A stretch of DNA of 64,000 nt, from positions 163,584 to 227,583 of the IMG/VR virus record IMGVR_UViG_3300042359_000853. One strand, given 5' to 3'. Below, one piece after another: positions 870 to 62,086 of this stretch (position 1 is the stretch's first letter; each line of letters starts with the position of its first letter). The translations under genes were made by a program, and so were the position numbers. The notes beneath the pieces are model-generated. The model was not told where the DNA came from and did not search any database. It was given only the letters and a program-made list of their open reading frames with translations.

Positions 870-953
870 ATTTCTAAAGTTTTTTTTAGTTATATATTAA
901 AGTTTTTTTTTCTCTATTCCTAACATTTTCATAAAAAATATTATAATTAGATT

Positions 954-2078
954 ATGAGTAAAATATTTTTAGTAGGTGATATACACCTAGGTATGGGTTG
1001 GCCTAATAGTTATACTAAATGGTCAAAGGTCCATCAAGATTATTTTTCCGATTTTCTATTTCCACTTCTTGAAAGTCAGTTAAGTAGCCAAGATATTATT
1101 GTATTACTTGGTGATTTTTTTGATAATCGTGAAGTGATACCTATAGATACCTTAAATTATGGAAAAAGTGTTATAGAAAGATTATCTCGGTTAGCTCCAA
1201 CACACATCATCGTTGGAAATCACGATCTTTGGACTAGAAGTTCATCCGAGATCAATTCAGTCAATATTTTTGGATGGATACCGAATGTTTCTATTTATCA
1301 AAAAACTTCCCAAATCCAATATAGAGATAAGAAGATTTGTATGATGCCCTATATTCACCATAAAGAAGAACAAATCAAAGAAATCGAAAAATTTAGAGAT
1401 AGTAACTATTTATTTTGTCATTCAGATCTGAATGGATGTAAAATGCACTTAACATCGACAGCGCATAGAAACTCGGATAAAATTGATCTAGATGAGTTCA
1501 GGTCTTTTGAAAAAGTAAGATCAGGTCATATTCACATTCGTCAAGAGACAGGTATATTCAAGTTTGTTGGTTCTATTTTTCAAATGGATAGAGCTGATAT
1601 GGGAGACCAGAAAGGTATTTGGATTATTGATACTGATGATGATTCCGAGGTTTTCATCCCCAACACGAAATCTCCTATTTTCGAAAAGGTTTATGTTAAA
1701 ACTCCTGAAGATGTTGAAGATTTATCTAACCTAAAAGATTCTAAAAACTGGATAGATCTCTATATCTCAAACTCACTTCTTATCAACAACAGAAAACTCA
1801 GAAGAAAGTTGGAGATTCTTTTAGAAACAATTAACTTTTTATCGGTAAGTTATATTGATGATATTCAAGTTTTAGAAAAATTAGAAGGTCAAAATGAGTC
1901 AGGAGTCTTGGACGAAGAGGTCATAGCAAGAGCTATCAATCTTGAACTCGAATATACAGAAGTTATTAAAAACTATATAGAAGAACAAAAGTGGGAATCA
2001 AAAAAGATCAAATCTGGTATTCTTACTGAGTTTGACGAAATTAGTAGAATATATCAAGATGGATTTCAAAAAAATTAA
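954..2078 (+). CDS. Recombination endonuclease subunit (T4 gp47 / SbcD-Mre11 metallophosphoesterase)
   Basis: GDIHLG, LGDFFDNR, VGNHD, FCH and SGHIH phosphoesterase motifs. Confidence 0.9.
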   Translation: MSKIFLVGDIHLGMGWPNSYTKWSKVHQDYFSDFLFPLLESQLSSQDIIVLLGDFFDNREVIPIDTLNYGKSVIERLSRLAPTHIIVGNHDLWTRSSSEINSVNIFGWIPNVSIYQKTSQIQYRDKKICMMPYIHHKEEQIKEIEKFRDSNYLFCHSDLNGCKMHLTSTAHRNSDKIDLDEFRSFEKVRSGHIHIRQETGIFKFVGSIFQMDRADMGDQKGIWIIDTDDDSEVFIPNTKSPIFEKVYVKTPEDVEDLSNLKDSKNWIDLYISNSLLINNRKLRRKLEILLETINFLSVSYIDDIQVLEKLEGQNESGVLDEEVIARAINLELEYTEVIKNYIEEQKWESKKIKSGILTEFDEISRIYQDGFQKN

Positions 2079-2081
2079 ACT

Positions 2082-2888
2082 ATGATACTTGTTACTGGAT
2101 ACAAAGGATTTATTGGTAAAAACCTATTTGATAAACTCATACAACTCAACTACTCCATCACAGGTTTAGATAGTGAATATTTTCTAGAAGAAGATTGGCA
2201 AGGTTGGCTAAAAAAGTACTTGAATGATAAATCACCAAGTTTCGTATTTCATGTAGGTGCGTGCTCCGATACACTAGAGACTGATGTAAATTATATGCTT
2301 ACTAGAAACTATGAATCTACTAGAATCATTTCTTCTTGGTGCGAAAGAAACGGTGTGGGTTTGGTTTATTCTTCCTCGGCTGCTAACTATGGATCGACTG
2401 GTCATCTTCCTACAAATCTTTATGGATGGAGTAAAAAAATAGCTGAAGATTTTGTATTATTAAAAGGTGGGGTTGCTCTTCGATATTTCAATGCCTTCGG
2501 ACCTGGTGAAGAAGGTAAAGGTAAAATGGCTTCTGTAGCCTATCAATCATGGATTAGAAATAAAGTGGGTGAGAAGATTAAACTCTTTCCAGGCCGTCCA
2601 ACTCGAGATTTTATCTATATAAGAGATATTGTAGAGGCGAATATATCTGCTATGAAAAACTACAGATCTATTTTTGGTAATTACTATGATATAGGAACTG
2701 GAGTTTCATCACCATTTGAAGATGTTTTAGAAAATTTAGATATACCTTTCACCTATACCGATAGTCTAGAAATACCAAAAGGATATCAATTTTTCACACA
2801 AGCTAATTCATCGAAATTTCTAAGAGGTTGGGAACCCAGATGGACTCTCTCAACTGCTCTAGCCGATTATAGAAAATATTTAGATTAA
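2082..2888 (+). CDS. hldD: ADP-L-glycero-D-manno-heptose 6-epimerase-like NAD-dependent epimerase
   Basis: TGYKGFIG Rossmann motif, FHVGACSDT, YSSSAANYG, YGWSK (YxxxK), LRYFN.FGPGE..KG.MAS, RDFIYI. Confidence 0.8.
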   Translation: MILVTGYKGFIGKNLFDKLIQLNYSITGLDSEYFLEEDWQGWLKKYLNDKSPSFVFHVGACSDTLETDVNYMLTRNYESTRIISSWCERNGVGLVYSSSAANYGSTGHLPTNLYGWSKKIAEDFVLLKGGVALRYFNAFGPGEEGKGKMASVAYQSWIRNKVGEKIKLFPGRPTRDFIYIRDIVEANISAMKNYRSIFGNYYDIGTGVSSPFEDVLENLDIPFTYTDSLEIPKGYQFFTQANSSKFLRGWEPRWTLSTALADYRKYLD

Positions 2889-3826
2889 GCAAATATCTTA
2901 TTCGCGTAGTTTCTGGTTTCTCTGCTCAATTGGTCCTGTATTTCTACAAAAGGAATTCCATCTTCTAGAGCTTTTTTATAAATATCTAGATTAGGACCAC
3001 TGTTGTATCCAGCAACAGCTAGGTCAAGTCTTTTCGGAAACCTATTTAGATGATCATTCATCATTTTTATATAGATTCTTAAAGATTCTTCTGAATTAGT
3101 TCTTAGACCACGACCACCATAGGAGTTCCAAGTTCCTATCAAAAACTGACACAGACCCACAGCTCCTGCACTAGATCTTGCCCTAGGATTAAAGTTAGAT
3201 TCAGTGTAGATTTGTCTTAGCGCTATAATATAGGGAAGACCTATTGAATTACAATCCCCCTCGAATTTTTTTGCTACTTCTTGGCCTACCACTTCTACGA
3301 ATTTATTCTTCAAGCTCTCATCATCAGGTAAAGGATCTCTAGAAGGGGCTTTAGCACCATCAAAAGTGGGAATACCCCCTTTCAGTGGAAGATCAAACTG
3401 TCTATTTAATACTGGTGATTCAGACTCCTTGCGAACAGGTCCTTCTGGTGGCATTTCAGTTGAGGGTTTTTTTGTAGTAGTAGAAGTTGTTGTTGCTTCT
3501 TTGGTTGTAGTTGTTGGTGTAGTATCTTGTTCTTTTGGTGTTCCGGCTGGTGTTTTCCAGGCCTGAGCTCTAGTTATCACTTTTTTTGGTGAGCCATCTT
3601 CTCTTTCATCTGGAAATTCAGTATCTAATATGTCGATTGATCTTTGATAAGAGTCTTTGAAATCTTTTCCAGTTATTTGATACCATTTCGTTGAACCCTT
3701 TCGTCTTGAGAGCCAATGTCCACCTTCTACCTTGTACTCAAAAGGATCGCCAGATCGTGTTTTAATTTCACCTACAGATTCGGTCAGATAGCTATAAAAT
3801 TGTTCCCAATTATGAAGTCTTCTCAT
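2885..3826 (-). CDS. Lytic transglycosylase (C-terminal SLT domain) with Thr-rich linker; putative virion protein
   Basis: IYTESNFNPRARSSAGAVGLCQF, AVAGYNSG and ETRNY SLT motifs; TTPTTTTKEATTTSTTT linker. Confidence 0.85.
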   Translation of the reverse strand: MRRLHNWEQFYSYLTESVGEIKTRSGDPFEYKVEGGHWLSRRKGSTKWYQITGKDFKDSYQRSIDILDTEFPDEREDGSPKKVITRAQAWKTPAGTPKEQDTTPTTTTKEATTTSTTTKKPSTEMPPEGPVRKESESPVLNRQFDLPLKGGIPTFDGAKAPSRDPLPDDESLKNKFVEVVGQEVAKKFEGDCNSIGLPYIIALRQIYTESNFNPRARSSAGAVGLCQFLIGTWNSYGGRGLRTNSEESLRIYIKMMNDHLNRFPKRLDLAVAGYNSGPNLDIYKKALEDGIPFVEIQDQLSRETRNYANKIFA

Positions 3827-3840
3827 AGATTTGTTTTTTT

Positions 3841-4407
3841 TTATCTAGAATAGTTAGGTGTTCTAGGCCCCTTTTTGCCCTCTTTTTCAACCTTTCTTTT
3901 ACGAGCAACAGATGCCTTTTTTTGTTTTTTTGTCATTTTAGCTGCTACTCTTACCTTACGACATTTTGGATATCCACCCCTCGACGCATCATCTCTACCA
4001 CATGGTGGATGTGATCCATCTGGATTTGTTTTAGAAATATCAACCCACTTTTCTTTAAACCACTTATCTAGACCACCGTGAGTATCTGAATAAGACCGTT
4101 TTTTTTCAAAGAACTGAGAATAGGATAGAATGTTATCTATAGATTCCTGTGTATTTTCTATTTGTTCTAGTTTATCGTAGTATTTCGGATCTTCCATCAG
4201 ATGATCAGTAGCTATTTCTCTAGCAATACTCTGGTCATCGGTGTGCTCCATTTCAACAGAAATACCCCTTTCTAGTTGCTTGTCGATCGTCTGATCTTCA
4301 ATAGGAAGATTGTGTTTCTTCTTGATATCTGCTAGAGTTTTACCATCGGATAGACCACCTGGTATTTTATCTTCTAAAAAAGATTGATATTTTAGAACGT
4401 CTTTCAT
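3841..4407 (-). CDS. Two-domain hypothetical protein (GIxVEMEHT...DHLxEDPKYY domain plus GLDKWFKEKWVD basic domain)
   Basis: Both motifs recur in large-phage hypothetical proteins; ORF is tightly packed with its neighbours. Confidence 0.7.
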   Translation of the reverse strand: MKDVLKYQSFLEDKIPGGLSDGKTLADIKKKHNLPIEDQTIDKQLERGISVEMEHTDDQSIAREIATDHLMEDPKYYDKLEQIENTQESIDNILSYSQFFEKKRSYSDTHGGLDKWFKEKWVDISKTNPDGSHPPCGRDDASRGGYPKCRKVRVAAKMTKKQKKASVARKRKVEKEGKKGPRTPNYSR

Positions 4408-5195
4408 TTTTTGGATCTTGATTTTTTCTTACCCTTTTTCCAGCGACCACCCTTTTCTTTGTATCTTTTAGCTGCTGCTCCTACAGCATAGGCTGAAGGC
4501 CAAACTTCGTATCTTGATTTGGCCCAACTCTTACAAGAAGCCCAAAGAGATGGATTGAGAGGTATGTTTTTCTCTAATAAAAAACTATATCCAACACTTT
4601 CATTATGTTGTATGTAAAGTTTCAGCTCATCTTGAATAAACCCAACCGCCTCTTCTATTCCAGAAAAGTATAACTCTTCAAATTCATCGTCTAAGTCTTC
4701 GAGATTAGTAGAGAATAGTTTATGTATTCTCACTAGACCTTCTTCACGATTTTCATCTATGTTGATAACCCACTCATAATAATAATCAAGATCGAGTTCA
4801 TCGCTAGTATATCTAACTTTCACAACAATATCATCATCTTGCATTTCCCAATCGAATTTAGATTCAAGCCCTGAAAAAAGTTCAGAAAATTCAATCATTT
4901 TTTCTTTTAGATAATTAATATCTTGAGATATATCTTCATTTATTTGATAAAATTGAGAAAATTTGTAAACAATACCCTCTTCTATCTGTGATTGAACTTG
5001 GGTATCTAAAATTTCATATTCATCTATATCGGGAAGAAGAGCTAATTTACTACCAGAATCCCAATCTACAAAAATACTTCCCATATCATCAATATAACTT
5101 ATTTTTCCCTCATCACCACTTCTAAGTTTAGTATAGGGATCTTCCAGTCGTATAATTCTTACTCTTTTTCCTATTAAATTGTCTTTTTCTTTCAT
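4404..5195 (-). CDS. Modular hypothetical protein (DUF4314-like N-terminus; basic VWPSAYA C-terminal domain)
   Basis: RVRIIRLEDPY..L..GDEG.I..IDDMGSIFVDWDSGSKLAL resembles DUF4314; C-terminus NPSLWASCK..AK.RYEVWPSAYA. Confidence 0.65.
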   Translation of the reverse strand: MKEKDNLIGKRVRIIRLEDPYTKLRSGDEGKISYIDDMGSIFVDWDSGSKLALLPDIDEYEILDTQVQSQIEEGIVYKFSQFYQINEDISQDINYLKEKMIEFSELFSGLESKFDWEMQDDDIVVKVRYTSDELDLDYYYEWVINIDENREEGLVRIHKLFSTNLEDLDDEFEELYFSGIEEAVGFIQDELKLYIQHNESVGYSFLLEKNIPLNPSLWASCKSWAKSRYEVWPSAYAVGAAAKRYKEKGGRWKKGKKKSRSKK

Positions 5196-5248
5196 ATCTG
5201 TATGTATATATATATTTTTTGAAAAATAGTAATTTTATATATAAACAA

Positions 5249-5935
5249 ATGATTACTACAAAAGATTTAGAAACAACATTCAAGGAAATATTCGAAACTG
5301 AAAAGGGGTTAGTTCAATCCATAGAAACTGTATTCGAATTATCAAGGGATAAAAGTTTTTACAAACTCGTAATTTCTATACATGGACTTTCTATCGAAGA
5401 TACACTTATTATTCATACTAAATTTATCTTCAAAACAAATTTAGAAAAAAACAAATTAATCGAAAACTCGTTTATCTATCTCTACGATATAAATTGTGAA
5501 TATCACAAAGTAGATTTTAGAAATATTATTGATCTTAGAAAAAAGATAGAAGATATTATTGAATCAAATGAGTTCGGAACAGATCTTCAAATACTCTCTG
5601 ATTTTATCGAGGCACCATCGATGTTCTTGAACTATTATCTTAAAAGAGCTAGAATAACAAACTACTCAATTTATGATGTTAAATATGATCCGAAATTTAA
5701 GACACTACCTTGTAGTCAAATAACATTTGATTTCAAGATAAATGTTAATAACGCTTATGATATTTCAGTTTCTATTCAGAAAAAAGAAAAAGAAGAGGTT
5801 GATGATATAGTGAGGTATAAATTCAGATTTCAATTTTTAGATAAAATCTTTAATAGAGAAACCGACACACTAACAAACATTCACTTTTTTATTGGATCAA
5901 ATATAGCAAAAACGCTCGATAAAATGATTAAATAA
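5249..5935 (+). CDS. Hypothetical protein
   Basis: Long ORF; start moved from 5219 to the in-frame ATG at 5249, just downstream of a TATATAAA element. Confidence 0.65.
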   Translation: MITTKDLETTFKEIFETEKGLVQSIETVFELSRDKSFYKLVISIHGLSIEDTLIIHTKFIFKTNLEKNKLIENSFIYLYDINCEYHKVDFRNIIDLRKKIEDIIESNEFGTDLQILSDFIEAPSMFLNYYLKRARITNYSIYDVKYDPKFKTLPCSQITFDFKINVNNAYDISVSIQKKEKEEVDDIVRYKFRFQFLDKIFNRETDTLTNIHFFIGSNIAKTLDKMIK

Positions 5936-5967
5936 TTTATATATACATAAAAATAAAAACTTCTACT

Positions 5968-6699
5968 ATGTTCAAACCAAATACCAATAACTATAGAACA
6001 AAATATTCTAAAATATCTCAATTTCATGATTTTACTGATAACATCTCATCTGAAAAAGATGATTTAGAAAGTGTAAAAAGAAGTTATGATCAAGATCATG
6101 ATTCAGATTATGAGCTACCTAATCTCTTCAAGTATAAATACAACCGTGTAACTCGAAAGATAGATGATAAAACGAAAGCTGAAGTTTTAGATGAGTTAGA
6201 AGAGATGCCAAATCCAAAAAAAGAAAAAGAATATACATTAGAACTTGAAAATTTAACTTCATTTGAGGATTTCGCAGATACACCGTCAAATGAAGTGAAT
6301 GAAGGACCAACTTCCTATATGTTTTTCAATAATCTTAAACTTATTCATAAACTTGTTAACGAAATGCTTACTTACGACCAAGAAGTAGTAAACTCTATTT
6401 TAGATCACGGTCACAACTGGGCCGAAGATCATATGTCAGTAGCAAAAGAAGCTATTTCTCATGTAAGAAACTATTTTGTTGGTGAAGTTGATGCTATCTC
6501 CGAATCTTACGAAGGTAACTATATGTTTTTCGGAAATCTAGTTTGTATTTCTGATATGATTGAAGAGATTATGGATAGAGATCCAAATAAAATTGACGTA
6601 GAGCTTAAAGAAAAACACGACTGGGCTGAAGATCATGTCTCAGCCGCTAAAGAAAATGTTACACAAGTTTATGATTTTCTAAAAAATGAAATTAAATAA
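5968..6699 (+). CDS. Hypothetical protein with two tandem (S/N)YMFF..NL...HxWAEDHxSxAKE domains
   Basis: Internal duplication is visible: SYMFFNNL...GHNWAEDHMSVAKE and NYMFFGNL...KHDWAEDHVSAAKE. Confidence 0.75.
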   Translation: MFKPNTNNYRTKYSKISQFHDFTDNISSEKDDLESVKRSYDQDHDSDYELPNLFKYKYNRVTRKIDDKTKAEVLDELEEMPNPKKEKEYTLELENLTSFEDFADTPSNEVNEGPTSYMFFNNLKLIHKLVNEMLTYDQEVVNSILDHGHNWAEDHMSVAKEAISHVRNYFVGEVDAISESYEGNYMFFGNLVCISDMIEEIMDRDPNKIDVELKEKHDWAEDHVSAAKENVTQVYDFLKNEIK

Positions 6700-9170: not shown

Positions 9171-9520
9171 TGGTGGAGGTGCTGGGATTCGAACCCAGGT
9201 TTCTACATTTACCTAAATAATCAATCATTCACAAGCTTAGAACTCTTTTCTAAGAGAACCAACTATCGGATTTTATCGAAGAACCTTCCGAAAAAACTTT
9301 TGAGGCTATTTATAGAGTTACCTCATTCTCGGAAACGTCTAGGCTACGGCCAATCTGTTTGCCTTTAGGATGTTGTTGCGTAGGGCGAATACTAAGTCTT
9401 CAACGCTTCCTACTTCATTCGTGTTGCCACTTAAAGTTTTCATACAACTTATGAATCGGTGAGTATGATCCGATGCTTGCTTGATTACCCGAATAAATGA
9501 GTCAAAAGCCATTCACCCCC
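9171..9520 (-). ncRNA. ssrA: tmRNA (one-piece, 350 nt)
   Basis: Minus strand starts GGGGGTGAATGGCTTTTGAC and ends CTGGG-TTCGAAT-CCCAG-CACCTCC-A-CCA. The 7-bp acceptor stem has the G3-U alanine wobble, a T-arm is present and CCA is encoded. Internal ORF 9428-9339 reads GNTNEVGSVEDLVFALRNNILKANRLAVA*. Confidence 0.95.
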
Positions 9521-9555
9521 GAGTGTTGATATATATAAAATCGAAAAGATAAGTT

Positions 9556-12022: not shown

Positions 12023-12047
12023 ACAGGGTATATATTATTTTCAAAAC

Positions 12048-12377: not shown

Positions 12378-12422
12378 TAAACAATCGGTTTTTAATATAT
12401 ATATAAAATTTAAAGGAATAAA

Positions 12423-13739: not shown

Positions 13740-13861
13740 ACTTTTAATCTATAATATCATACCTATTAGGTATTATAAATAATTATATTTTTTATAGTAA
13801 AATATAGAAAAAAAGTTGAAAAAATACTACTTTACAGATTTATATTTTAATATATAGATCT

Positions 13862-16791: not shown

Positions 16792-16815
16792 TCTTCTTTT
16801 TTAATATATACCTTC

Positions 16816-18109: not shown

Positions 18110-18208
18110 TTTATGTTATTTTTTCTTTTTATAGTTTTTTTTAGACTATAAGTTTTTTTTTCATAGAATATAGCTGGAAATTAAAAAATATTCCGTAACT
18201 TTGCTATT

Positions 18209-19472: not shown

Positions 19473-19524
19473 AGTGGTTTTTTATTTTTTCTGGGAATAA
19501 TCCTTTTCATATATATAAAAATAT

Positions 19525-21599: not shown

Positions 21600-21639
21600 T
21601 AAAACTTTTAATCTTTATTTTTATATATTAAAATTTTGG

Positions 21640-22332: not shown

Positions 22333-22351
22333 TTCTTCTATATATAAAGAT
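22333..22351. promoter_or_regulatory. Type example of the recurrent (A)ATATATA upstream element (putative late promoter, bidirectional)
   Basis: 19-nt gap between the divergent gp2-like and gp4-like starts contains CTATATATAAAG; the same element occurs upstream of more than 25 genes. Confidence 0.65.
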
Positions 22352-24364: not shown

Positions 24365-24403
24365 AGACGAGGAGCGAATGTTTCATATTATATATATAGA
24401 AAT

Positions 24404-24433
24404 AAAAAAAGTCCCTCTTTTGGAGGGACTTTT
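24404..24433 (-). terminator. Terminator after major capsid gene
   Basis: aaaaaaagtccctc-ttttg-gagggactttt hairpin. Confidence 0.85.
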
Positions 24434-24455
24434 TCTTTTTTTGATTACAAGAAGG

Positions 24456-26114: not shown

Positions 26115-26188
26115 TTTTTTATTTTTTTTTGTTTTATATATTCCTTAAAAAACCATACTTTTTACAGAGGTGGATTTTTTATTGAATA

Positions 26189-28318: not shown

Positions 28319-28347
28319 GAAGGCTTTTTTTTGTTTATATATTAATT

Positions 28348-28380: not shown

Positions 28381-28396
28381 ATATAAACTCAAAAAC

Positions 28397-30103: not shown

Positions 30104-30146
30104 ACCTTTCTACATATATATAAAATACTCCAAAAGTTTTTTGCAT

Positions 30147-33913: not shown

Positions 33914-33971
33914 ATTTTTTTATTTATTTTGATACTATATATATTTATTTAAAAGTGATTTTTTACACTTT

Positions 33972-34826: not shown

Positions 34827-34872
34827 AGTTTTTTATTTTTTTTTTTTAGGATATATATAAAATCAAAAATTA

Positions 34873-35274: not shown

Positions 35275-35335
35275 TTTTAATTTCTAGATTTTATCTTGAA
35301 ATTTTTAATTTCAAGTATAGTTATATATCTAGAAA

Positions 35336-36505: not shown

Positions 36506-36543
36506 TTTAATATATATAAACAAAAAAATAAAAGTCCAAAAAA

Positions 36544-42973: not shown

Positions 42974-43041
42974 AACTTATTTTTTTTTATTTTTATATAT
43001 TAAAACAAAAAAATGGGTTTTTTTACGAAAAACTCGGTTTT

Positions 43042-46184: not shown

Positions 46185-46210
46185 AATAATATTAAATTTG
46201 TTCTATATAT

Positions 46211-46962: not shown

Positions 46963-47007
46963 AGATCAGATACTCTATATATAAAAAATAATATATAACT
47001 TCAAGAT

Positions 47008-48882: not shown

Positions 48883-48935
48883 TTACTTAAAAAACCGTTT
48901 TTTTTATATATATTATTAAAAACATACTGGTTCAT

Positions 48936-51361: not shown

Positions 51362-51411
51362 AGTGATTAATTTTTTTGTAAAGATAATGGATTTTTTTTA
51401 TATATAAAAAT

Positions 51412-52343: not shown

Positions 52344-52392
52344 AAAAGTGATTTTTAAAAATAATATATAAACAAAAAAAAACGAACAATTT

Positions 52393-53028: not shown

Positions 53029-53050
53029 CATATAAAAAAAAATAGAAAAT

Positions 53051-53080
53051 GACCTCACTTTTTCAAGTGGGGTTTTTTTC
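53051..53080 (+). terminator. Intrinsic terminator
   Basis: acctcactt-tttc-aagtggggt followed by a T-run. Confidence 0.75.
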
Positions 53081-53108
53081 TGCCTCAAATATTTCAATAT
53101 ATAGAATT

Positions 53109-54117: not shown

Positions 54118-55093
54118 GGCTGATTTCTCTCATACGACCTATGAACGCAACTGCTACTACTAGAGGATCAGAGGAAGTTTGTAAAAATCTCTGAGATTCA
54201 CTCAAAATCCAATTGTATTTGAATAATTTTTCAGAATCTACTTTTTTGTTTTCTAGATGCCAAAGTATAAAGCTCTTACCCCATAAATCTAAAAATTCTA
54301 CTACACGATCAGAACCAAATTTATCTGATATAAAAAAATATATCTTTTCATAATCTATATTTTTGTCATAAATAAGAGAATAGCACTCTCTGATCAAATC
54401 ATTTGAAATACTTATACCTGAAAAATTAGATTGACCAGAATTTTTATAATACTCAAGTTCAACTAGTATAGATCTGAAATCTGGGAATTTTTTTTTGATG
54501 AGAGAGACCAAATCTTCTTTGGACATCGACAGATTTTCACTAGGTAAGATTTGATCGTTGATCTTTCTGAACATTTCTATTTTTAGTGCTCTCTCCTCAT
54601 CAATACTTTGACACTCAAGATTAATTTGTATGAAACGACTTCGAATACCTTCAGATATTTTACTAAGATGATTTGTAGATAGTATAAACCGAACATTCTT
54701 GGTAGAGTAATCTTCTATGTATGCTTTAAGAGCGTCTTGATATTGAATTGAAGTTCTATCGAATTCATCTAAAAAAACATACTTAATCAGATTGGTCTCT
54801 GATTGTTCTATATCAAAGTCGAGAAATACTTTAGAGCAGAACTCGTCTATTTTTCCTCTCAAAATATCTATAGAAGTATAGAAAGAAGAGTTTATCTCGA
54901 TGTGTGGTGAATTTTTAGAGTATTTACCAATAAGAATTCTTGCAAGAGAAGTTTTACCTATGCCGTAATGTCCATGTAGAATAACATTTTGGGTGAGGCC
55001 AGATGAAAAATAATCTCTGACTCTTTTTGGTAATAGAAGATCTTCGAACTTTTTAGGTCTCCACTTATCAGAAATAAGAAGTTGTCTGTCCAT
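54110..55093 (-). CDS. Sliding-clamp loader ATPase (gp44/RFC-like)
   Basis: DKWRPKKFEDLLLP, GHYGIGKTS, YVFLDEFD, FILSTN, IRSRF, PDFRS; ATG at 55093 (tracked TTG at 55132 also possible). Confidence 0.9.
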   Translation of the reverse strand: MDRQLLISDKWRPKKFEDLLLPKRVRDYFSSGLTQNVILHGHYGIGKTSLARILIGKYSKNSPHIEINSSFYTSIDILRGKIDEFCSKVFLDFDIEQSETNLIKYVFLDEFDRTSIQYQDALKAYIEDYSTKNVRFILSTNHLSKISEGIRSRFIQINLECQSIDEERALKIEMFRKINDQILPSENLSMSKEDLVSLIKKKFPDFRSILVELEYYKNSGQSNFSGISISNDLIRECYSLIYDKNIDYEKIYFFISDKFGSDRVVEFLDLWGKSFILWHLENKKVDSEKLFKYNWILSESQRFLQTSSDPLVVAVAFIGRMREISLT

Positions 55094-55163
55094 TGGGTTG
55101 ATTATATGTGGAGGATTTCCGATTGTTTTCAAGAAAGATTAAAAAACAAATATATACAAAAAT

Positions 55164-55898
55164 ATGATAGGAAACAAATTTAATTTTGATGATGTCTATT
55201 TCAGGGATTTGACTATTTGTCTTTTAGACTTATTACAAGGTAAGTTGAAATGGATAAATAGGTTTTCTGAAGGAGATAGACAAGTTGAAGTTCCTATGTA
55301 TTATTCTCTAACAGGTGATGAAAGATACCTACTTGATTCTTTTTCCGATGACGTAGTTTCTAACAATCGTCTTGTTGAGATAAATACCGATATTATCCCA
55401 CGAGGTCATATAACACTCAAGTCTTGGAACATCAAATCTGATGATTTCACGAATCCAAACGTTTGGCTTAAAACCATAGTTGAAAATGAAAGTGAAATAA
55501 AAACGATGCTTTCAAAAGTTAGAGCTATACCAATACAAGCTAGTTACGACCTTTCAATAAAAGTTAAAAGTGAAATAGACGTATTCAAATGTTCTCAAGC
55601 AATTATGAACACTCTGTGGTTGTATCGATATATGTATTTTGAGTATAATTATATGAACATCGATGCGGTGGTTATAGTTCCAGATACAGAACAAGTAACC
55701 ATTTCTAGAGAAAAGAATTTAACTTCAGATAATACAATAAAAATTGATGTATCACTTGAGGTTCACTCTTACTACCCAGCTTTTATGGAAAATTTAGAAG
55801 ATTATAACTCTGCAGCTCTTTCACAATGGCGAGGTAATCTATATACAACAAAAAGTAGATCTGGTAAATCAACCAACGATTTGGTCCAAAAAATATAA
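55164..55898 (+). CDS. Tail sheath stabilizer / tail completion protein (gp15-like)
   Basis: YFRDL.I...DL......RF......VPMYY, IPRG, P....YDLSI pattern. Confidence 0.6.
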   Translation: MIGNKFNFDDVYFRDLTICLLDLLQGKLKWINRFSEGDRQVEVPMYYSLTGDERYLLDSFSDDVVSNNRLVEINTDIIPRGHITLKSWNIKSDDFTNPNVWLKTIVENESEIKTMLSKVRAIPIQASYDLSIKVKSEIDVFKCSQAIMNTLWLYRYMYFEYNYMNIDAVVIVPDTEQVTISREKNLTSDNTIKIDVSLEVHSYYPAFMENLEDYNSAALSQWRGNLYTTKSRSGKSTNDLVQKI

Positions 55899-55968
55899 TT
55901 TAAAAAAAGGTAAAAAACACACTTTTTAAATAATATATATAGTTTAAAAAAAATAAACATTTTTTAAT

Positions 55969-57252
55969 ATGAAGAACTTGAAATTAGAATTATTTAACTT
56001 TGTAAGAAGTTTAAATTTAGATCAGGAAGAAATCTCGACCATAGTAAATTCACATATGGGTGCTATAGGTAGAGTATCTGAAAAGCAGGTAATTTCCTCC
56101 TTGAACGAATCATTGAAAATTCATACCTATGATAGATCAGTAAAGAATTTACTCGAATCACTCAATGATGACGTGGCAAATCATAGCCTTATTTATGAAC
56201 TAAAGCACCTCTATAATGTTCTTAATTCTAAGAATCAAGGTGAGCTTTATAGACAACCTATTAATGTTGTTCTTGAAGTTATCAACATGGAGTCTGATCA
56301 AGATAGATTAGGAAAAATTGTAAATGAGCTAGCTATTTATGACTGGGTTCCTGAAATTAAACTATTTGTTCATAATCTTACTAAATCTCCTGAGCAAAGA
56401 TCAAATCTTCTATCAGGGGGTAGTTCAGAAAGTGTCTATACTATAGTTGAGCAAGTAGAAGGTGGTTATTGTGCATTTATCAACGGCAGTTGGTTCCTTC
56501 TAACCGAGAGTGGCGTTGAAAAGACCCTTCTTGAAAACTGGGTTAAAAATGATGAAGATCTTAGAACTCTTAGAAACATCGAAACTGGTCTAAGGTATTC
56601 AATGATTCATGAAGATAGAATTAATTTCAGAATCTCTGAAAACTTAACTATCGGTCTTTCTGTAGCTAACGAAGGACTTATCTATATCAATGATGATAAG
56701 ATGAACAAAGAAACTACACTAGAGACCTTATTTCAATCACCTATTATTCCTATTGCTAACAAAAACTTCTATCCCATTCTATTAGAAACACAGAAGAATA
56801 TCGATAAGTTCGTTGAACTTGATGTAGTTAAAAGAGTAACTAATTTAGTTAATCCATATTTAGAATGCTTTGTATTCAATTACAAAGCAGGCAACTATGT
56901 TTATCGTTGCGATCAAAGATACGGCAATTCATTCTATAAATACGACACGGCACTTGAGCTTGTAAATGAAATCAAAAATGAATTAAATAGCGATCTTACC
57001 TATTTCTTTGAGAATAAGTTAGATAAAGAAATTGTAAAAAATAGAAGATTAGAAGATAAAGAAAGAGAAATAACTCTAAAATTAGAAGACGTAAATATAA
57101 ATCTATCAAAAATCAATAATTCACTAAGAGTTACCGGAGAGTCAAAAATTCTTTTAGAGGCTCGTCAAAATCTTACAAAAAGAAAAGAACATTTAGAAGA
57201 AGAGTTGATGGCAGTCAAAGAAGTAAAGAGTTCAAATAAGTATAAAATGTAA
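55969..57252 (+). CDS. Hypothetical protein with coiled-coil C-terminus
   Basis: 427-aa ORF with its own AATATATA element. Confidence 0.75.
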   Translation: MKNLKLELFNFVRSLNLDQEEISTIVNSHMGAIGRVSEKQVISSLNESLKIHTYDRSVKNLLESLNDDVANHSLIYELKHLYNVLNSKNQGELYRQPINVVLEVINMESDQDRLGKIVNELAIYDWVPEIKLFVHNLTKSPEQRSNLLSGGSSESVYTIVEQVEGGYCAFINGSWFLLTESGVEKTLLENWVKNDEDLRTLRNIETGLRYSMIHEDRINFRISENLTIGLSVANEGLIYINDDKMNKETTLETLFQSPIIPIANKNFYPILLETQKNIDKFVELDVVKRVTNLVNPYLECFVFNYKAGNYVYRCDQRYGNSFYKYDTALELVNEIKNELNSDLTYFFENKLDKEIVKNRRLEDKEREITLKLEDVNINLSKINNSLRVTGESKILLEARQNLTKRKEHLEEELMAVKEVKSSNKYKM

Positions 57253-57273
57253 AAAAAAAGTTCGGGAAGATGT

Positions 57274-57302
57274 AAAAACCTCTATATAACATAGGGGTTT
57301 TT
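57274..57302 (+). terminator. Probable terminator
   Basis: aaaaacctctat-ataac-ataggggttttt. Confidence 0.65.
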
Positions 57303-57362
57303 ACTTTTTAAACAAAAATTGAAAACTTTTAACAAATTATACAATAAAAAAAATTAAAACCT

Positions 57363-57728
57363 GTGTATCTTCATAATAAAGATCTTTACATGGAGATAAT
57401 TGTCTCCAAAGCAACTGGAAAACTCACCAATAAATCTAAACTTATGCTAGAAATTCTAGCAAAAAGAACGATTAAAAAAATGAGATATAGAAGTAACGAT
57501 GATAAACTTGACTGCTATCAGTCGGGAATTCTGGATATGTTCTCTAACTGGTATAATTTCAATGAAGAAAAATCAGATAATGCCTTTGCTTACTTTACCG
57601 AAATATTTAAAAGAGGTATTGCTCGTGGTTACAACGATTTATACAAGAAAAAAGGAGATAATGATCATCAAATAAGACTTATTTCTATAGAATCATCAAA
57701 CGATGGACAAGGATTACATTCTATTTAA
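57363..57728 (+). CDS. Late-transcription sigma factor (T4 gp55-like), short
   Basis: YLHNKDLY and D.....I.DM..NW.NFNEEKS.NAFAYFT.I match the gp55-family YV.NK.L and NFDPEKS.NPFAYFTQI motifs; GTG start. Confidence 0.7.
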   Translation: MYLHNKDLYMEIIVSKATGKLTNKSKLMLEILAKRTIKKMRYRSNDDKLDCYQSGILDMFSNWYNFNEEKSDNAFAYFTEIFKRGIARGYNDLYKKKGDNDHQIRLISIESSNDGQGLHSI

Positions 57729-59378: not shown

Positions 59379-61106
59379 TCAAATACAGTAGTAAGAGGAC
59401 ATAATCGACCCATTTGTATTGATCTGTAGAGGTCTTTTTGTCCCTACACCACCAACTGTAAGTGCTATCCACTTTCCACCACCATTTGTAGGTGTGGTAA
59501 GTGCGGCATCATCATAGATAATATCTCCATTAATTAAAAACGCTAATGATTTAGTGCTATAATAAGCTCTGACTGTTTGATAAGTTGAACAAGCACCAGC
59601 TGCGTTTATAGCATCCGGAGTAGTTCTACCTAAGAATGTAAATAAGGTTGGAGTTGGTGTGGGTGTTCTTGTTGGAGTAACAGTTGGTGTTTTGGTTACT
59701 GTAGGAGTTGGGGTTTTAGTTGATGTTATTGTGGGTGTAGGTGTAGGACTCATAACAGGATTTTCATTCTGTGGCAAACCCCAAACGAGTTTAATGGATT
59801 TACTTTGTGAGTACAAATTGGAAAGATTAACAGAAATCTGAGAGAAAGTTCCAGAGAATTTTATTATACCTGTAGCCATGTTAGCACCACTTAAAATATA
59901 ACTAGATTCTGATACTAATGAAGATTTTAGTTCTGGACAATCGTTACAATCACAACACATAGAATAAGTTGAGCTAAATTGTAAATATTCCGTATTCGTA
60001 ATACCTGATTGGGAGAAACCTAGATGATAGATAGCTAAAACAGGATCAGATACGGGAGAATTGAAGACAAAACTATGTGTTCCATTACAAACCATCCTGA
60101 ATCCACCTGTTCTTTCAGGATTTCTAATATCACAACTCATGTAATTGTAGGCACTCGAATAAGTATTTCCACCACAAGAGAACGTAGCACAAGATCCAGC
60201 ACCAATTTCGCAGTTGTGGCCAGCTATATCTATTGGATAAATTGTTCTACTTGGTGTTGTGCACAAACCAGATACGTTATTCTCTACCGTGTTTATGAAT
60301 TGAGAAACTAAATTGTAAAGACTAGAAGATGATGTTGGTGAACTATAGAAATTTGCTGTTCTAGGAACAGGATCTACAAAACTACCACCGTTGGGTTGAG
60401 ACCAGTCAAGACCATTCAAGTAAGACCATAAATAAACTCCATCACCTTGTGTACATTCAGGACAACCAGGTGTTGCGCTAGGTGTCTGTGTTAATGTAGG
60501 TGTCAGGCTCGGTGTTAAAGTTGATGTGATTGATGGAGTAGGTGTGTTGGTGGGTGTCGCTTCTGGTGATGCACCGGGTGATCTTGTTATACTAGGTGTT
60601 ACTGTTATTGTGGGTGTTAATGTAGGTGTAACTGTTGAGGTTGAACTTGGTGTGGATGTAGGTGTGTCAGTTGGTATTGGACTCTCAGTTGATGATGGTG
60701 TAGAAGTATTCGTTGGTGTTGGATCTGGGGATATACCGGGAGTTTTAGTTAAAGTTGGTGTTGGTGTCGGGGTAGAAGTGACAGTGGATGTTACAGTTAG
60801 TGTTGGTGATACAGCAGGCAAAGAAGTGTGCGATGGAGATGGTGTAATAGAAGGTGTCAAAGTTATAGTAGGTGATGGTGTTGGTGTTAGAATATAGTTA
60901 GATACTAAAACTGTATAATCACAACCATCACAGGTAAAAATATAAGTTCCATTTAACTCATCCGATCCTCGGCCGTATAAAATAGGATCAAAAGTCCAAG
61001 GAAAACTAAAAGTAGAACTAATATTTAAGACACCTCCACCACTGGGAAAAATAAGTTGTAATGTGCAGTTTGTAAGCGGACTAGCCTCAAAAGTTACTGT
61101 AGCCAT
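59379..61106 (-). CDS. Pro/Thr-rich (TPTP) modular protein, putative virion surface protein
   Basis: Two TPTPS/T linkers (~60480-60890 and ~59650-59750) separating Cys-containing beta-rich domains; no signal peptide. Confidence 0.7.
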   Translation of the reverse strand: MATVTFEASPLTNCTLQLIFPSGGGVLNISSTFSFPWTFDPILYGRGSDELNGTYIFTCDGCDYTVLVSNYILTPTPSPTITLTPSITPSPSHTSLPAVSPTLTVTSTVTSTPTPTPTLTKTPGISPDPTPTNTSTPSSTESPIPTDTPTSTPSSTSTVTPTLTPTITVTPSITRSPGASPEATPTNTPTPSITSTLTPSLTPTLTQTPSATPGCPECTQGDGVYLWSYLNGLDWSQPNGGSFVDPVPRTANFYSSPTSSSSLYNLVSQFINTVENNVSGLCTTPSRTIYPIDIAGHNCEIGAGSCATFSCGGNTYSSAYNYMSCDIRNPERTGGFRMVCNGTHSFVFNSPVSDPVLAIYHLGFSQSGITNTEYLQFSSTYSMCCDCNDCPELKSSLVSESSYILSGANMATGIIKFSGTFSQISVNLSNLYSQSKSIKLVWGLPQNENPVMSPTPTPTITSTKTPTPTVTKTPTVTPTRTPTPTPTLFTFLGRTTPDAINAAGACSTYQTVRAYYSTKSLAFLINGDIIYDDAALTTPTNGGGKWIALTVGGVGTKRPLQINTNGSIMSSYYCI

Positions 61107-61150
61107 ATTAAACTATATATTCTAAAACAGAGCTATCACACAAACAAAAT

Positions 61151-61417
61151 TCATGAAAGTTTTATAAGTTTTATTTTTAGATCTCCTGAACCTTTGATTA
61201 CTCGATGATAGACACCTTTTGGTATAAAAATTTTACCGGATATTATTTTAGGAAGTTCATTATCCATTTGTATCATCCAATCTGTTCCAGATAATGACTC
61301 AATTATTCTATCTTCTCGATCTCTATGCCAAACATAATCACCAGAATCAACATCTTGATCGAAAGTTCTTAGGAAGATATTTTCACCTATCGTTTTTTCT
61401 TTGAAAGGTAAATTCAT
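61151..61417 (-). CDS. Small cupin-like protein
   Basis: WHRDREDR...IFIPKGVYHRVIKG cupin-type His pattern. Confidence 0.6.
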   Translation of the reverse strand: MNLPFKEKTIGENIFLRTFDQDVDSGDYVWHRDREDRIIESLSGTDWMIQMDNELPKIISGKIFIPKGVYHRVIKGSGDLKIKLIKLS

Positions 61418-61443
61418 AAATTTTTTTTTTAATATTTTTTATT

Positions 61444-62025
61444 TTACCAGAACCCCGGATATGACTTACCCCAAAGAGAGGAGAATCTGTTAGCACGACA
61501 TGCCCAGTAACCAGGTGTCATTTTATCCTTTTTTTCACGACAATTATGTCTTTTCGAAAATCTAGCTCTTGCTTTCGGATCACTAACTTTAGCATTTAGA
61601 CCACCTTTTACATCACCAAAATGAACTACTTTCACATTTCCAGTCTTGGGGTTTTTAACATAAACTTTATACTTTTTAGGTCCTGAACTTCTCATAGGTT
61701 TTCCAAGACTTACTTTTTTTCCTTTATATTCAGCTTCTGTAATAAACTCATCACAAAGTATCGGAAAATCAAGTGGCACCATTTCCCCTTCGAACTTTGC
61801 CCAAAGACCTAGATCACTCTCTTCAAAAAGAACTCGATCAGCATCACTCAATAATTCTTGATGATTTCTTGATTCTCTTATCAACTCGAAAAATGAAGTA
61901 GATCCAGGTCTAAATATATTTTCCAAAACTGATATCTTATTTTCTAAGTGATAAACTAGATTATTACTTGGCTTCTTATCGATGAAGTCCTCGAATTTTA
62001 ATATATTCTCGTAAATATTTTCCAT
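61444..62025 (-). CDS. Two-domain hypothetical protein (basic KKYKVYV...HFGD...HNC...GYWAC C-terminal domain)
   Basis: Motif recurs in large-phage hypothetical proteins; KFEDF N-terminal motif and an ITE^AEYKG junction. Confidence 0.7.
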   Translation of the reverse strand: MENIYENILKFEDFIDKKPSNNLVYHLENKISVLENIFRPGSTSFFELIRESRNHQELLSDADRVLFEESDLGLWAKFEGEMVPLDFPILCDEFITEAEYKGKKVSLGKPMRSSGPKKYKVYVKNPKTGNVKVVHFGDVKGGLNAKVSDPKARARFSKRHNCREKKDKMTPGYWACRANRFSSLWGKSYPGFW

Positions 62026-62086
62026 AACTTTATCCAGGGGTATTTTTTGTTAGTTTATATATATATCTAAATTTGAAACTCAGAAA

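What the first reader, a model, noticed from the sequence alone, without database searches (positions are those of the whole stretch)
891..62066. Near-palindromic (A)ATATATA element upstream of most genes, often shared by divergent pairs
Seen about 5-35 nt upstream of starts at roughly 891, 5205, 5236, 5938, 9530 (tmRNA), 12030, 12397, 13850, 16804, 19510, 21622, 22340, 24389, 26136, 28336, 30116, 33938, 34852, 35323, 36510, 42994, 46204, 46977/46991, 48905, 51399, 52363, 53097, 55150, 55932, 61114 and 62056. It is often preceded by a T-tract (e.g. GTGGATTTTTT-AATT-AATATATA before the protease gene). Established: T4 late promoters are a lone -10 TATAAATA read by gp55. Inference: this is the variant late promoter of the gp55-like gene at 57363, and its self-complementarity lets one element drive two divergent genes, which would explain the frequent strand switching.
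Basis: partly seen in the sequence, partly recalled or inferred. Interest (0 to 1): 0.62.

Follow-up and report, generated by a model that had tools for sequence, protein, structure and literature searches.

The report
Variant T4-type late promoter in megaphage
A short A/T box, (A/T)ATATATA, marks about half of the gene starts in this lake-water giant phage and is most likely its late promoter, a one-base variant of the phage T4 late promoter that is read in one direction by the phage's own small gp55-like sigma factor.

Summary
All 32 listed sites carry an alternating A/T run of at least 7 nt. Sense ATATATA lies within 60 nt upstream of 77 of 147 genes, against 5.5 ± 2.3 in dinucleotide shuffles. 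It is depleted about 4.5-fold inside genes on both strands. It is common in divergent and tandem gaps and nearly absent from convergent gaps.

It behaves as a promoter. It is conserved upstream of the capsid gene in five relatives with 35-69% identical capsid proteins. It precedes the tmRNA gene. Its spacing to start codons is bimodal: 3-9 nt (probably leaderless mRNAs) or 15-28 nt.

It is an 8-bp box with no -35 element and differs from T4's TATAAATA only at -9. It precedes virion, lysis and packaging genes but not replication genes or the gp55-like gene. That gene is a true gp55 homologue. Related Bacteroidota phages with gp55 homologues use TATACATA or AATAAATA.

Correction: the element is directional. 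All 32 one-sided 7-nt runs read ATATATA on the sense strand. Only the 8-bp form TATATATA can face both ways, and shared use is plausible at a few gaps only. A second phage sigma (ECF type) remains a rival reader. No transcription start sites were mapped.

The parts
891..897 (-). late-promoter box, sense ATATATA, 21 nt before ATG of 243-869
5205..5215 (-). 11-nt alternating run; 9 nt before ATG of 4404-5195
5236..5243 (+). TATATATA, 5 nt before ATG 5249 (gene 5249-5935): leaderless class
5938..5945 (+). box 22 nt before ATG of 5968-6699
9529..9537 (-). box before the tmRNA gene (9171-9520). The last A of the sense motif is at 9530 and the mature 5' G is at 9520. The predicted start at 9524 would leave a 4-nt leader.
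12029..12035 (-). box 6 nt before ATG of 11525-12022 (leaderless class)
12395..12405 (.). 11-nt run shared by divergent genes 12048-12377 (18 nt) and 12423-13739 (17 nt)
13850..13856 (+). box 5 nt before ATG of resolvase gene 13862-14431
16804..16810 (+). box 5 nt before ATG of 16816-17355
19509..19517 (.). 9-nt run, 7 nt before 19525-19896 and 37 nt before 19287-19472
21622..21628 (-). box 22 nt before ATG of portal gene 19893-21599
22339..22346 (.). TATATATA filling a 19-bp divergent gap. ATG 22352 lies 5 nt to the right and ATG 22332 lies 6 nt to the left. This is the best candidate for a truly bidirectional, doubly leaderless module.
24389..24398 (-). box 24 nt before 22847-24364 (homing-endonuclease-like), just after the terminator hairpin of the capsid gene
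26135..26141 (-). box 20 nt before ATG of major capsid gene 24456-26114; conserved in five relatives
28336..28342 (-). box 17 nt before ATG of prohead protease gene 26189-28318
30114..30122 (-). box 11 nt before 28397-30103 (homing-endonuclease-like)
33936..33944 (-). box 22 nt before ATG of tail sheath gene 30194-33913
34851..34859 (-). box 25 nt before endolysin gene 33972-34826
35322..35328 (-). box 47 nt before 34873-35274 (non-canonical spacing)
36510..36518 (.). 9-nt run, 25 nt before 36544-36969 and 5 nt before ATG 36505 of the gene 35336-36505
42994..43000 (-). box 20 nt before 42623-42973
46204..46210 (-). box 19 nt before 43599-46184
46976..46983 (-). TATATATA 13 nt before 46678-46962
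46991..46997 (+). separate box 10 nt before 47008-47847; this divergent pair has two boxes
48905..48913 (.). 9-nt run shared by the large terminase gene 48936-51080 (23 nt) and 48271-48882 (22 nt)
51399..51406 (.). TATATATA 5 nt before 51412-51849 and 37 nt before 51077-51361
52364..52370 (+). box 22 nt before 52393-53028
53097..53103 (+). box 5 nt before ATG 53109; the longer ORF from 53049 is probably over-called
55150..55156 (+). box 7 nt before the gp15-like tail sheath stabiliser gene 55164-55898. On the other strand it overlaps the host-type box of the clamp loader gene.
55933..55941 (+). box 27 nt before 55969-57252
61114..61120 (-). box 7 nt before 59379-61106
62056..62066 (.). 11-nt run, 21 nt before GTG 62087 and 30 nt before 61444-62025
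57363..57728 (+). gp55-like minimal sigma gene (121 aa), the proposed reader of the box. It has no ATATATA upstream, here or in five relatives.
55147..55154 (-). host-type Bacteroidota -7 box TATATTTG, 14 nt before the clamp loader gene 54110-55132
18196..18203 (+). host-type box TAACTTTG, 5 nt before the peptidase gene 18209-19300
9171..9520 (-). tmRNA gene, a non-coding gene preceded by the box

Best explanation
The element is a directional, -10-type promoter with consensus 5'-(A/T)ATATATA-3' on the non-template strand. It has no -35 partner. It is the late promoter, or at least the main phage-specific promoter, of an uncultivated lake-water megaphage of the Mahaphage clade that infects Bacteroidota.

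The most likely reader is host RNA polymerase core carrying the phage's 121-aa gp55-like sigma (57363-57728). By analogy with T4, the box would span -13 to -6, and it differs from TATAAATA only at -9 (T instead of A). Transcription would then start about 6 nt after the last A.

This gives two classes of late mRNA. Roughly 40% would be leaderless or nearly so, with the ATG 3-9 nt after the box (mode 5). Roughly 40% would have a 10-22 nt A-rich leader without a Shine-Dalgarno sequence, as is usual in Bacteroidota.

A smaller set of host-type TAnnTTTG promoters drives early and replication genes, including an ECF-type phage sigma. The gp55-like gene carries neither box.

Because the 8-bp form TATATATA is its own reverse complement, it presents the heptamer on both strands, and in a few very short divergent gaps it probably fires both ways.

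Shown here: motif statistics, orientation, context, conservation in relatives, gp55 homology and the association with gene function.
For: Enrichment and avoidance
- 77 of 147 upstream regions carry the sense motif, against 5.5 ± 2.3 in shuffles.
- Intergenic DNA is enriched 79-fold over coding DNA.
- Inside coding sequences there are 12 sense and 13 antisense copies, against 55 ± 7 expected. This fits selection against stray promoters on either strand.

Orientation
- 32 of 32 one-sided 7-nt runs are in the sense orientation, p = 5e-10.
- In five relatives the figure is 48 of 51.

Context
- Divergent gaps 23 of 29, tandem 44 of 88, convergent 1 of 8.

Spacing
- Bimodal: 38 sites at 3-9 nt (mode 5), 35 at 15-28 nt, 16 elsewhere. 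The same two peaks appear in relatives.
- A is found 6 nt after the box at 62 of 87 sites.

Non-coding gene
- The box lies 9 nt before the mature 5' end of the tmRNA.

Conservation
- ATATATA is kept 20-30 nt before the capsid gene ATG in five relatives with 35-69% identical capsid proteins, while the flanks diverge. It is absent before the gp55-like gene in all six genomes.

Anatomy
- One 8-bp box, W at -13 (A 34, T 45, C/G 8), and no column above 0.3 bit from -30 to -8. In T4 too, A replaces T at -13 in 9 of 50 late promoters (PMC2988020).

Reader
- PHROG 234 'late sigma transcription factor', E 1e-7.
- A profile of 45 family members hits T4 gp55 (7d7c_F) at E 4e-10 over residues 8-132.
- An AF2 model with pLDDT 88 has 7d7c_F as its top Foldseek hit, TM 0.74.
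- The T4 pocket residues for A-12 and A-8 (Y97, T99; PMC7892883) are conserved here (NAFAYFTE), matching the conserved A at those two positions.

Cross-phage pattern
- PAU and PTm1 have complete genomes, a gp55-like gene and no other sigma region-2 gene. They use (T/A)ATACATA.
- Lak-A1 uses AATAAATA.
- All of these fit WATA-N-ATA.

Function
- 8 of 9 annotated virion, lysis or packaging genes have their own box, against 0 of 13 replication, regulatory or metabolic genes. Fisher p = 3e-5.

RNA
- Contigs from four freshwater metatranscriptomes cover the capsid and protease genes, 24424-28322.
Against: - No transcription start site was mapped. The RNA data are assembled contigs, which cannot show 5' ends. 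The flanking 'silent' stretches may simply be absent from the strains sampled.
- Timing ('late') is inferred from gene function only.
- The contig, and all close relatives, also encode an ECF-type sigma with regions 2 and 4.
- No gp33 homologue or T4-type clamp (PF02916) was found, and the contig is only about 39% of a genome.
- The gp55-like protein is 121 aa against 185 aa in T4, so parts of the T4 mechanism may be missing.
- Some non-virion genes carry the box: two homing-endonuclease-like genes, a resolvase and the tmRNA.
- Some replication genes, such as topoisomerase II, lie downstream of a box-headed gene and could be co-transcribed from it.
- Gene starts were called by a simple ORF rule.
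Confidence: 0.66

Rival explanations
1. The box is a promoter, but it is read by the phage's ECF-type sigma (contig 85972-86592, outside the window) or by another phage factor. The gp55-like protein would then recognise something else.
For: An ECF-type sigma with Sigma70_r2 and r4_2 domains is encoded behind a host-type TAATTTTG box. It would therefore be made early, and it is conserved in all four close relatives checked. No experiment links either sigma to the box.
Against: - ECF sigmas use region 4 to read a -35 element at fixed spacing, and no such element accompanies the box.
- PAU and PTm1 have complete genomes with no second region-2 sigma, yet show the same kind of box, TATACATA.
- The box is one base away from the T4 gp55 box.
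- The gp55 pocket residues for A-12 and A-8 are conserved.
Confidence: 0.12
2. One reading: one self-complementary element generally drives both genes of a divergent pair, and this accounts for the frequent strand switching.
For: - 14 divergent gaps in the contig hold a single run of at least 8 nt that offers ATATATA on both strands.
- 6 of these have canonical spacing on both sides, including two gaps of only 19-20 bp that leave no room for another promoter: 22333-22351, and contig 27174-27193.
Against: - The 7-nt form is strictly one-way: 32 of 32 here and 48 of 51 in relatives.
- 9 motif-bearing divergent gaps serve one side only, and 3 use two separate boxes.
- Runs of at least 8 nt are not significantly enriched in divergent gaps, p = 0.16.
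- Canonical spacing on both sides is not above random placement, 6 observed against 3.6 expected, P = 0.10.
- Half of the strand switches are convergent junctions, which a promoter cannot explain.
Confidence: 0.2
3. The box is a host sigma-A promoter variant, or simply an A/T-rich -10/UP-like sequence used by unmodified host polymerase.
For: It is A/T-only and sits where a -10 element would. Host polymerase core is needed in any case.
Against: - The Bacteroidota sigma-A -7 consensus TAnnTTTG is present in this genome as a separate, distinct class of about 14 sites, before the clamp loader, ABC transporter, HNH endonuclease and ECF sigma genes. The box lacks the TTTG part.
- The box and the host-type element are split by gene function.
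- Related phages of the same host phylum use different central bases.
Confidence: 0.07
4. The box is not a promoter. It would be an RNA-level signal (translation enhancer or processing site) or a DNA-structural or protein-binding site unrelated to initiation.
For: Many copies lie only 4-8 nt from the start codon, where a translation signal could act. Bacteroidota lack a Shine-Dalgarno sequence.
Against: - It precedes a non-coding tmRNA gene.
- It is absent between tightly packed genes within operons.
- It is avoided on the antisense strand of genes as strongly as on the sense strand, which an RNA signal would not cause.
- It has a second spacing class at 15-28 nt.
- It is nearly absent from convergent gaps.
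Confidence: 0.05

Closest known systems
Bacteriophage T4 late promoter (TATAAATA) read by gp55, with gp33 and the gp45 sliding clamp
   Same: - A single 8-bp A/T-only box at the -10 position with no -35 element.
- A or T tolerated at the first position.
- An A/T-rich stretch downstream.
- Late transcripts of either polarity (PMC2988020).
- A gp55 homologue is encoded, with the A-12 and A-8 pocket residues conserved.
- The box precedes virion genes.
   Different: - Position -9 is T, not A.
- The sigma is 121 aa against 185 aa.
- No gp33 or T4-type clamp was found.
- About 40% of boxes sit 3-9 nt from the ATG, implying leaderless mRNAs.
- The host is Bacteroidota and the mRNAs lack a Shine-Dalgarno sequence.
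- The box also precedes a tmRNA gene and mobile-element genes.
Variant late-promoter consensus sequences of other T4-family phages (KVP40, 44RR, S-PM2; Aeh1 with a/gC at -13/-12)
   Same: In silico consensus boxes that stay close to TATAAATA in phages with gene 55 (PMC2988020).
   Different: Those variants keep the AAA core. Here the change is at -9, a base that T4 gp55 flips into a shallow pocket formed by N13 and H95 (PMC7892883).
Upstream boxes found here in other Bacteroidota phages with gp55-like genes: PAU and PTm1 ((T/A)ATACATA), Lak-A1 (AATAAATA)
   Same: The same WATA-N-ATA frame and the same gp55-like family. Lak-A1 also has the host-type TATCTTTG box.
   Different: The central base is C (PAU, PTm1) or A (Lak) instead of T. 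I found no published description of these boxes.
Bacteroidota sigma-A promoters (-33 TTTG, -7 TAnnTTTG; from established knowledge of the phylum)
   Same: Present in this phage as a separate class of about 14 sites, often TATCTTTGTAAAAAAA.
   Different: The ATATATA box lacks the TTTG part and heads a different functional set of genes.
A/T-rich promoters of jumbo phages that encode their own multisubunit RNA polymerases (phiKZ, AR9)
   Same: Short A/T-rich boxes close to the start site in very large phage genomes (papers listed).
   Different: Those are read by phage polymerases. I did not search this contig for polymerase subunit genes. Iyer et al. assign sigma-encoding phages with a gp23-type capsid to a group that lacks its own polymerase (PMC7824862).

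Membership tests
T4-type late promoter / gp55-dependent late transcription | A single 8-bp A/T box at the -10 position with no conserved -35 element | tested here: met
   The position matrix of 87 sites gives W-ATATATA. No column from -30 to -8 exceeds 0.3 bit.
T4-type late promoter / gp55-dependent late transcription | Consensus TATAAATA | tested here: not met
   The consensus is (A/T)ATATATA, with T rather than A at -9. TATAAAT and ATAAATA are not enriched upstream in this clade.
T4-type late promoter / gp55-dependent late transcription | The phage encodes a gp55 homologue (a sigma region-2-like protein) | tested here: met
   PHROG 234 at E 1e-7. Family profile against PDB 7d7c_F gp55 at E 4e-10. 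Foldseek top hit 7d7c_F at TM 0.74.
T4-type late promoter / gp55-dependent late transcription | The box lies about one helical turn upstream of mapped transcription starts | not testable with these tools
   Only assembled RNA contigs were available. Indirect support: the ATG lies 5 nt after the box in the modal class, and the mature tmRNA 5' end lies 9 nt after it.
T4-type late promoter / gp55-dependent late transcription | Heads late (virion, lysis) genes but not early or replication genes | tested here: met
   8 of 9 virion, lysis or packaging genes have their own box, against 0 of 13 replication or regulatory genes, p = 3e-5. Timing itself was not measured.
T4-type late promoter / gp55-dependent late transcription | gp33 co-activator | not tested
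   No family model for gp33 was at hand. The neighbours of the gp55-like gene gave no relevant Pfam or PHROG hit.
T4-type late promoter / gp55-dependent late transcription | Activation by a gp45-type sliding clamp through a C-terminal epitope of gp55 | tested here: inconclusive
   - A clamp loader is present at 54110-55132.
- PF02916 gives no hit in the contig, two complete relatives, PAU or PTm1.
- The candidate neighbouring gene turned out to be gp15-like.
- The gp55-like protein has a conserved, low-confidence C-terminal tail (ISxExSNDGxGxHSI) that could be such an epitope.
Bacteroidota sigma-A promoter | -7 element TAnnTTTG | tested here: not met
   The box has no TTTG. TAnnTTTG forms a separate class of about 14 oriented sites.
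ECF sigma promoter | Conserved -35 and -10 elements at fixed spacing | tested here: not met
   No upstream element accompanies the box. A candidate AACTTTT element showed no strand bias, 9 sense against 7 antisense.
Leaderless mRNA | Transcription starts at or within a few nt of the start codon | not testable with these tools
   Spacing of 3-9 nt at 38 of 89 sites, mode 5, places the A of the ATG at the T4-equivalent +1. The same peak appears in relatives.

The most novel reading that the evidence does not exclude
gp55-type late promoters have diversified at the single flipped base -9: A in T4 and Lak, C in PAU and PTm1, T in this Mahaphage lineage. The change tracks lineages of a shortened gp55, which would give naturally orthogonal sigma/promoter pairs. 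In this lineage the 8-bp box alone would specify leaderless late mRNAs, and in its palindromic form TATATATA it would work as a complete 19-20 bp bidirectional promoter for two leaderless genes.
Probability: 0.4. Interest if true: 0.62.

Novelty: new variant of a known kind. Interest (0 to 1): 0.5.

Why it matters
- I found no published promoter description for the huge uncultivated phages of the Mahaphage clade. This element would give a first map of their transcription units and a probable scheme: host-type promoters first, then phage sigma(s), then the late box.
- It offers a simple rule for annotating late genes and true start codons in these genomes. Several ORFs here are over-called by 5-20 codons relative to the box.
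- The natural A/C/T series at -9, set against the solved T4 gp55 open complex, makes the specificity of the shallow -9 pocket directly testable.
- The abundance of apparently leaderless late genes in a phage of a phylum that lacks Shine-Dalgarno pairing is a testable point about translation initiation.

Tried and rejected
- Megablast of 10 kb against phage records gave no match.
- A single-sequence search of the gp55-like protein against PDB and Pfam gave nothing. The family profile and the fold were needed.
- I tested whether the T-tract before the box is a terminator tail. Only 5 of 87 sites pass a strict hairpin search, against 3% of controls, so this is not general.
- I looked for a third promoter class for the ECF sigma. 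AAACTTTT is conserved before the gp55-like gene in four genomes. Genome-wide, AACTTTT shows no strand bias (9 against 7) and k-mer counts gave nothing, so it is left as a weak lead.
- The divergent neighbour of the clamp loader gene was a candidate sliding clamp. Its homologues carry PF16724 (gp15 tail sheath stabiliser), so the idea was rejected.
- PF02916 (T4 clamp) gave no hits.
- RNA contigs cover the capsid and protease genes but cannot give 5' ends. The uncovered flanks are homing-endonuclease-like genes that may be missing from the sampled strains, so they are not a valid DNA-contamination control.
- Single-residue covariation between gp55 and the -9 base: only P94 (T4 numbering) tracks A at -9, in T4 and Lak, and there are too few lineages to count.
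- TAG was read as Q only for Lak-A1. There the genome shows the recoding: coding density rises from 0.68 to 0.86, and three TAG codons lie inside the gp55-like match.

Full report
**What the window is**

The window is the last 64 kb of a single 227,583-bp contig. The contig has 33% G+C and is 96% coding under the standard code. Genes lack a Shine-Dalgarno sequence and have A-rich leaders. CheckV rates the contig as about 39% of a genome. DNA runs that hold it come from lake water.

The capsid protein and the gp55-like protein are closest to uncultivated 462-735 kb phages: LR745206, LR756502, LR756504, LR756501/3 and LR756500. More distant matches are the Prevotella Lak megaphages, Tenacibaculum phages PTm1 and PTm5, and phage PAU. 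[quoted passage not shown] PAU's host has been reclassified as a Sphingobacterium (PMC4621102). A protein at 40716-42617 carries a type IX secretion sorting domain, which also points to a Bacteroidota host.

- All 32 listed positions carry an alternating A/T run of 7-11 nt.
- The unit is at least 7 nt. Runs of exactly 6 nt are at background, with 145 in coding DNA and 9 in intergenic DNA. Runs of 7 nt or more number 71 intergenic against 25 nominally coding, and many of the 25 sit at over-called ORF starts.
- ATATATA/TATATAT is 79-fold richer in intergenic than in coding DNA.
- 77 of 147 upstream regions have the sense heptamer, against 5.5 ± 2.3 in 500 dinucleotide-preserving shuffles.
- Inside genes it is depleted about 4.5-fold on both strands relative to codon shuffles. 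Other A/T heptamers are not depleted to that degree.
- In the window, 38 of 70 genes have it, or 37 of 52 genes with an upstream gap of at least 15 nt. It therefore marks most transcription units rather than most genes.

**It behaves like a promoter**

- Gaps of at least 15 nt carry it in 23 of 29 divergent, 44 of 88 tandem and 1 of 8 convergent cases.
- It precedes the tmRNA gene. The sense sequence reads TTTTATATATAT-CAACACTC-GGGGG, and the mature 5' end follows 9 nt after the last A of the heptamer.
- Its distance to the start codon is bimodal: 38 sites at 3-9 nt (mode 5), 35 at 15-28 nt and 16 elsewhere. Five relatives show the same two peaks.
- Upstream of the capsid gene the heptamer is kept in five relatives (35-69% protein identity) while the flanks have diverged.
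- Contigs from four freshwater metatranscriptomes cover the capsid and protease genes (24424-28322), but contigs cannot show 5' ends.

**It is directional**

Among runs of exactly 7 nt that have a gene start on one side only, 32 of 32 read 5'-ATATATA-3' on the sense strand of that gene (p = 5e-10). In 50-kb stretches of five relatives the count is 48 of 51.

The position matrix gives W at the base before the heptamer (A 34, T 45, C/G 8) and an A/T-rich, T-biased flank. Nothing resembles a -35 element.

**Relation to the T4 late promoter**

T4 late promoters are a lone 8-bp TATA box about one helical turn before the start site. They have no -35 element, A replaces T at -13 in 9 of 50 sites, and late transcripts run in either polarity (PMC2988020). 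Placed in the same frame, -13 to -6, the present box is W-A-T-A-T-A-T-A and differs from TATAAATA only at -9. With the T4 geometry, the modal 5-nt spacing puts the A of the ATG at +1, which would make those mRNAs leaderless. At the tmRNA gene the same geometry predicts a start at 9524, leaving a 4-nt leader.

**The proposed reader**

The 121-aa protein at 57363-57728 matches PHROG 234, 'late sigma transcription factor', at E 1e-7. It belongs to a large family, with 680 representative clusters at E up to 0.001. A profile of 45 members finds T4 gp55 (PDB 7d7c_F) as the best PDB hit, at E 4e-10 over gp55 residues 8-132. An AlphaFold model with mean pLDDT 88 has 7d7c_F as its top Foldseek hit at TM 0.74, followed by sigma region-2 domains.

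In the T4 open complex, gp55 flips three non-template bases: A-12 (Y97), A-9 (a shallow pocket formed by N13 and H95) and A-8 (T99) (PMC7892883). The Y and T residues are conserved here (NAFAYFTE), as are A-12 and A-8 in the box. H95 is F, and -9 is the base that differs.

The protein is shorter than T4 gp55. It ends in a conserved, low-confidence tail (ISxExSNDGxGxHSI) of unknown role.

**Pattern across phages**

Unbiased upstream k-mer counts give these results:

| Phage | Top upstream box |
|---|---|
| LR745206, LR756502 | ATATATA ranks first |
| LR756504, LR756500 | ATATATA ties for first |
| LR756501 | ATATATA is among the top four |
| PAU, PTm1 | (T/A)ATACATA |
| Lak-A1 (with TAG read as a sense codon) | AATAAATA, plus the host-type TATCTTTG |

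All of these phages have the gp55-like gene. PAU and PTm1, which are complete genomes, have no other sigma region-2 gene. The frame WATA-N-ATA therefore travels with gp55-like proteins, and the central base varies by lineage.

**Which genes carry the box**

- With their own box: portal, major capsid, prohead protease, tail sheath, endolysin, large terminase, gp15-like tail sheath stabiliser, and a virion structural protein outside the window.
- Without it: clamp loader, SbcD-like nuclease, DNA methyltransferase, exonuclease, Lon-like protease, topoisomerase II, ABC transporter, HNH endonuclease, glycosyl- and methyltransferases, a peptidase, the ECF sigma and the gp55-like gene.
- The count is 8 of 9 against 0 of 13, p = 3e-5.
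- Several genes of the second set sit behind a different, oriented box, TAnnTTTG (often TATCTTTGTAAAAAAA). This is the Bacteroidota sigma-A -7 element, with about 14 sites, mostly outside the window.
- At 55147-55156 the host-type box of the clamp loader gene and the late box of the gp15-like gene overlap on opposite strands.

**A rival reader**

The contig also encodes an ECF-type sigma (Sigma70_r2 plus r4_2) at contig 85972-86592, behind a host-type box. It is conserved in the close relatives. The absence of a -35 element and the PAU and PTm1 comparison make it the less likely one.

**Bidirectional use**

After preferring ATG over nearby GTG or TTG starts, 26 of 31 divergent gaps carry the motif:

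- 14 hold one run of at least 8 nt that offers the heptamer both ways.
- 3 hold two or more runs.
- 9 serve one side only.

Six of the 14 have canonical spacing on both sides, against 3.6 expected by random placement (P = 0.10). Runs of at least 8 nt make up 60% of runs in divergent gaps and 41% in tandem gaps (p = 0.16).

The clearest case is CAT-TTCTTC-TATATATA-AAGAT-ATG at 22330-22354, a 19-bp gap with both ATGs 5-6 nt from the box. A second such gap lies at contig 27174-27193. Shared use is thus plausible at some loci. It is not shown, and it does not account for the strand switching.

**Limits**

- No start sites and no timing data.
- Simple ORF-based gene calls.
- The contig is a partial genome.
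- gp33 and the sliding clamp were not found.
- Searches of the held literature found no description of this box, or of TATACATA, as a phage promoter.

Noticed in passing
contig G000:C1:85972-86592 (+), outside the window; locus L012:5972-6592: A second phage sigma factor of ECF type (Sigma70_r2 plus Sigma70_r4_2, 206 aa). It lies behind a small ORF and a host-type TAATTTTG box and is conserved in LR745206, LR756502, LR756504 and LR756501. LR756504, LR756500 and Lak-A1 have several such genes.
   Followed up: partly
window 18196-18203 (+) and 55147-55154 (-); about 12 more sites in contig 1-163583: A separate, oriented promoter-like class, TAnnTTTG (often TATCTTTGTAAAAAAA), which is the Bacteroidota sigma-A -7 element. 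It lies before the clamp loader, ABC transporter, HNH endonuclease, peptidase and ECF sigma genes. Lak-A1 shows the same TATCTTTG box.
   Followed up: partly
window 22847-24364 (-) and 28397-30103 (-): Two paralogous homing-endonuclease-like genes (PHROG 3339; Pfam on 22847-24364 gives DUF7487 plus a REase domain) flank the capsid-protease pair, and each has its own box. An RNA contig joint from 28344 to 29794 in run X17 suggests that a related strain lacks most of the second gene, as expected for a mobile insertion.
   Followed up: partly
window 13862-15597 (+): A serine resolvase gene (13862-14431) is followed by a transposase gene (14428-15597, PHROG 506). This looks like an IS607-like pair inside the phage. 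The resolvase ATG lies 5 nt after a late box.
   Followed up: no
window 9171-9520 (-): A phage tmRNA with a long predicted tag peptide of 29 residues ending in LAVA.
   Followed up: no
window 26115-26135: The A-tract leader between the capsid promoter and its ATG varies in length among strains in the metatranscriptomes: 1, 3 or 5 extra T on the + strand at 26121.
   Followed up: no
window 36963-38117 (-) and 40716-42617 (-): A PA14-domain protein, and a protein with a cohesin domain plus a type IX secretion C-terminal sorting domain. Both lie in an operon headed by late boxes. They could be host-surface-directed or virion-decorating proteins, and they indicate a Bacteroidota host.
   Followed up: no
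window 57250-57362 and the equivalent stretches of L001-L003: AAACTTTT followed by a TATAAC/ACAAT-like element is conserved upstream of the gp55-like gene in four genomes. It could be a middle promoter, but AACTTTT shows no strand bias genome-wide.
   Followed up: partly
window 21640-22377, 35336-36523, 53049-53720, 5219-5935: The longest-ORF starts (GTG, TTG or an early ATG) are probably over-called. An ATG 5-6 nt after a late box gives starts at 22332, 36505, 53109 and 5249.
   Followed up: partly
window 57363-57728, residues 105-121: The gp55-like protein ends in a conserved but low-confidence tail (ISxExSNDGxGxHSI in relatives with 48-79% identity). It may be a short binding motif, possibly for a sliding clamp.
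   Followed up: no
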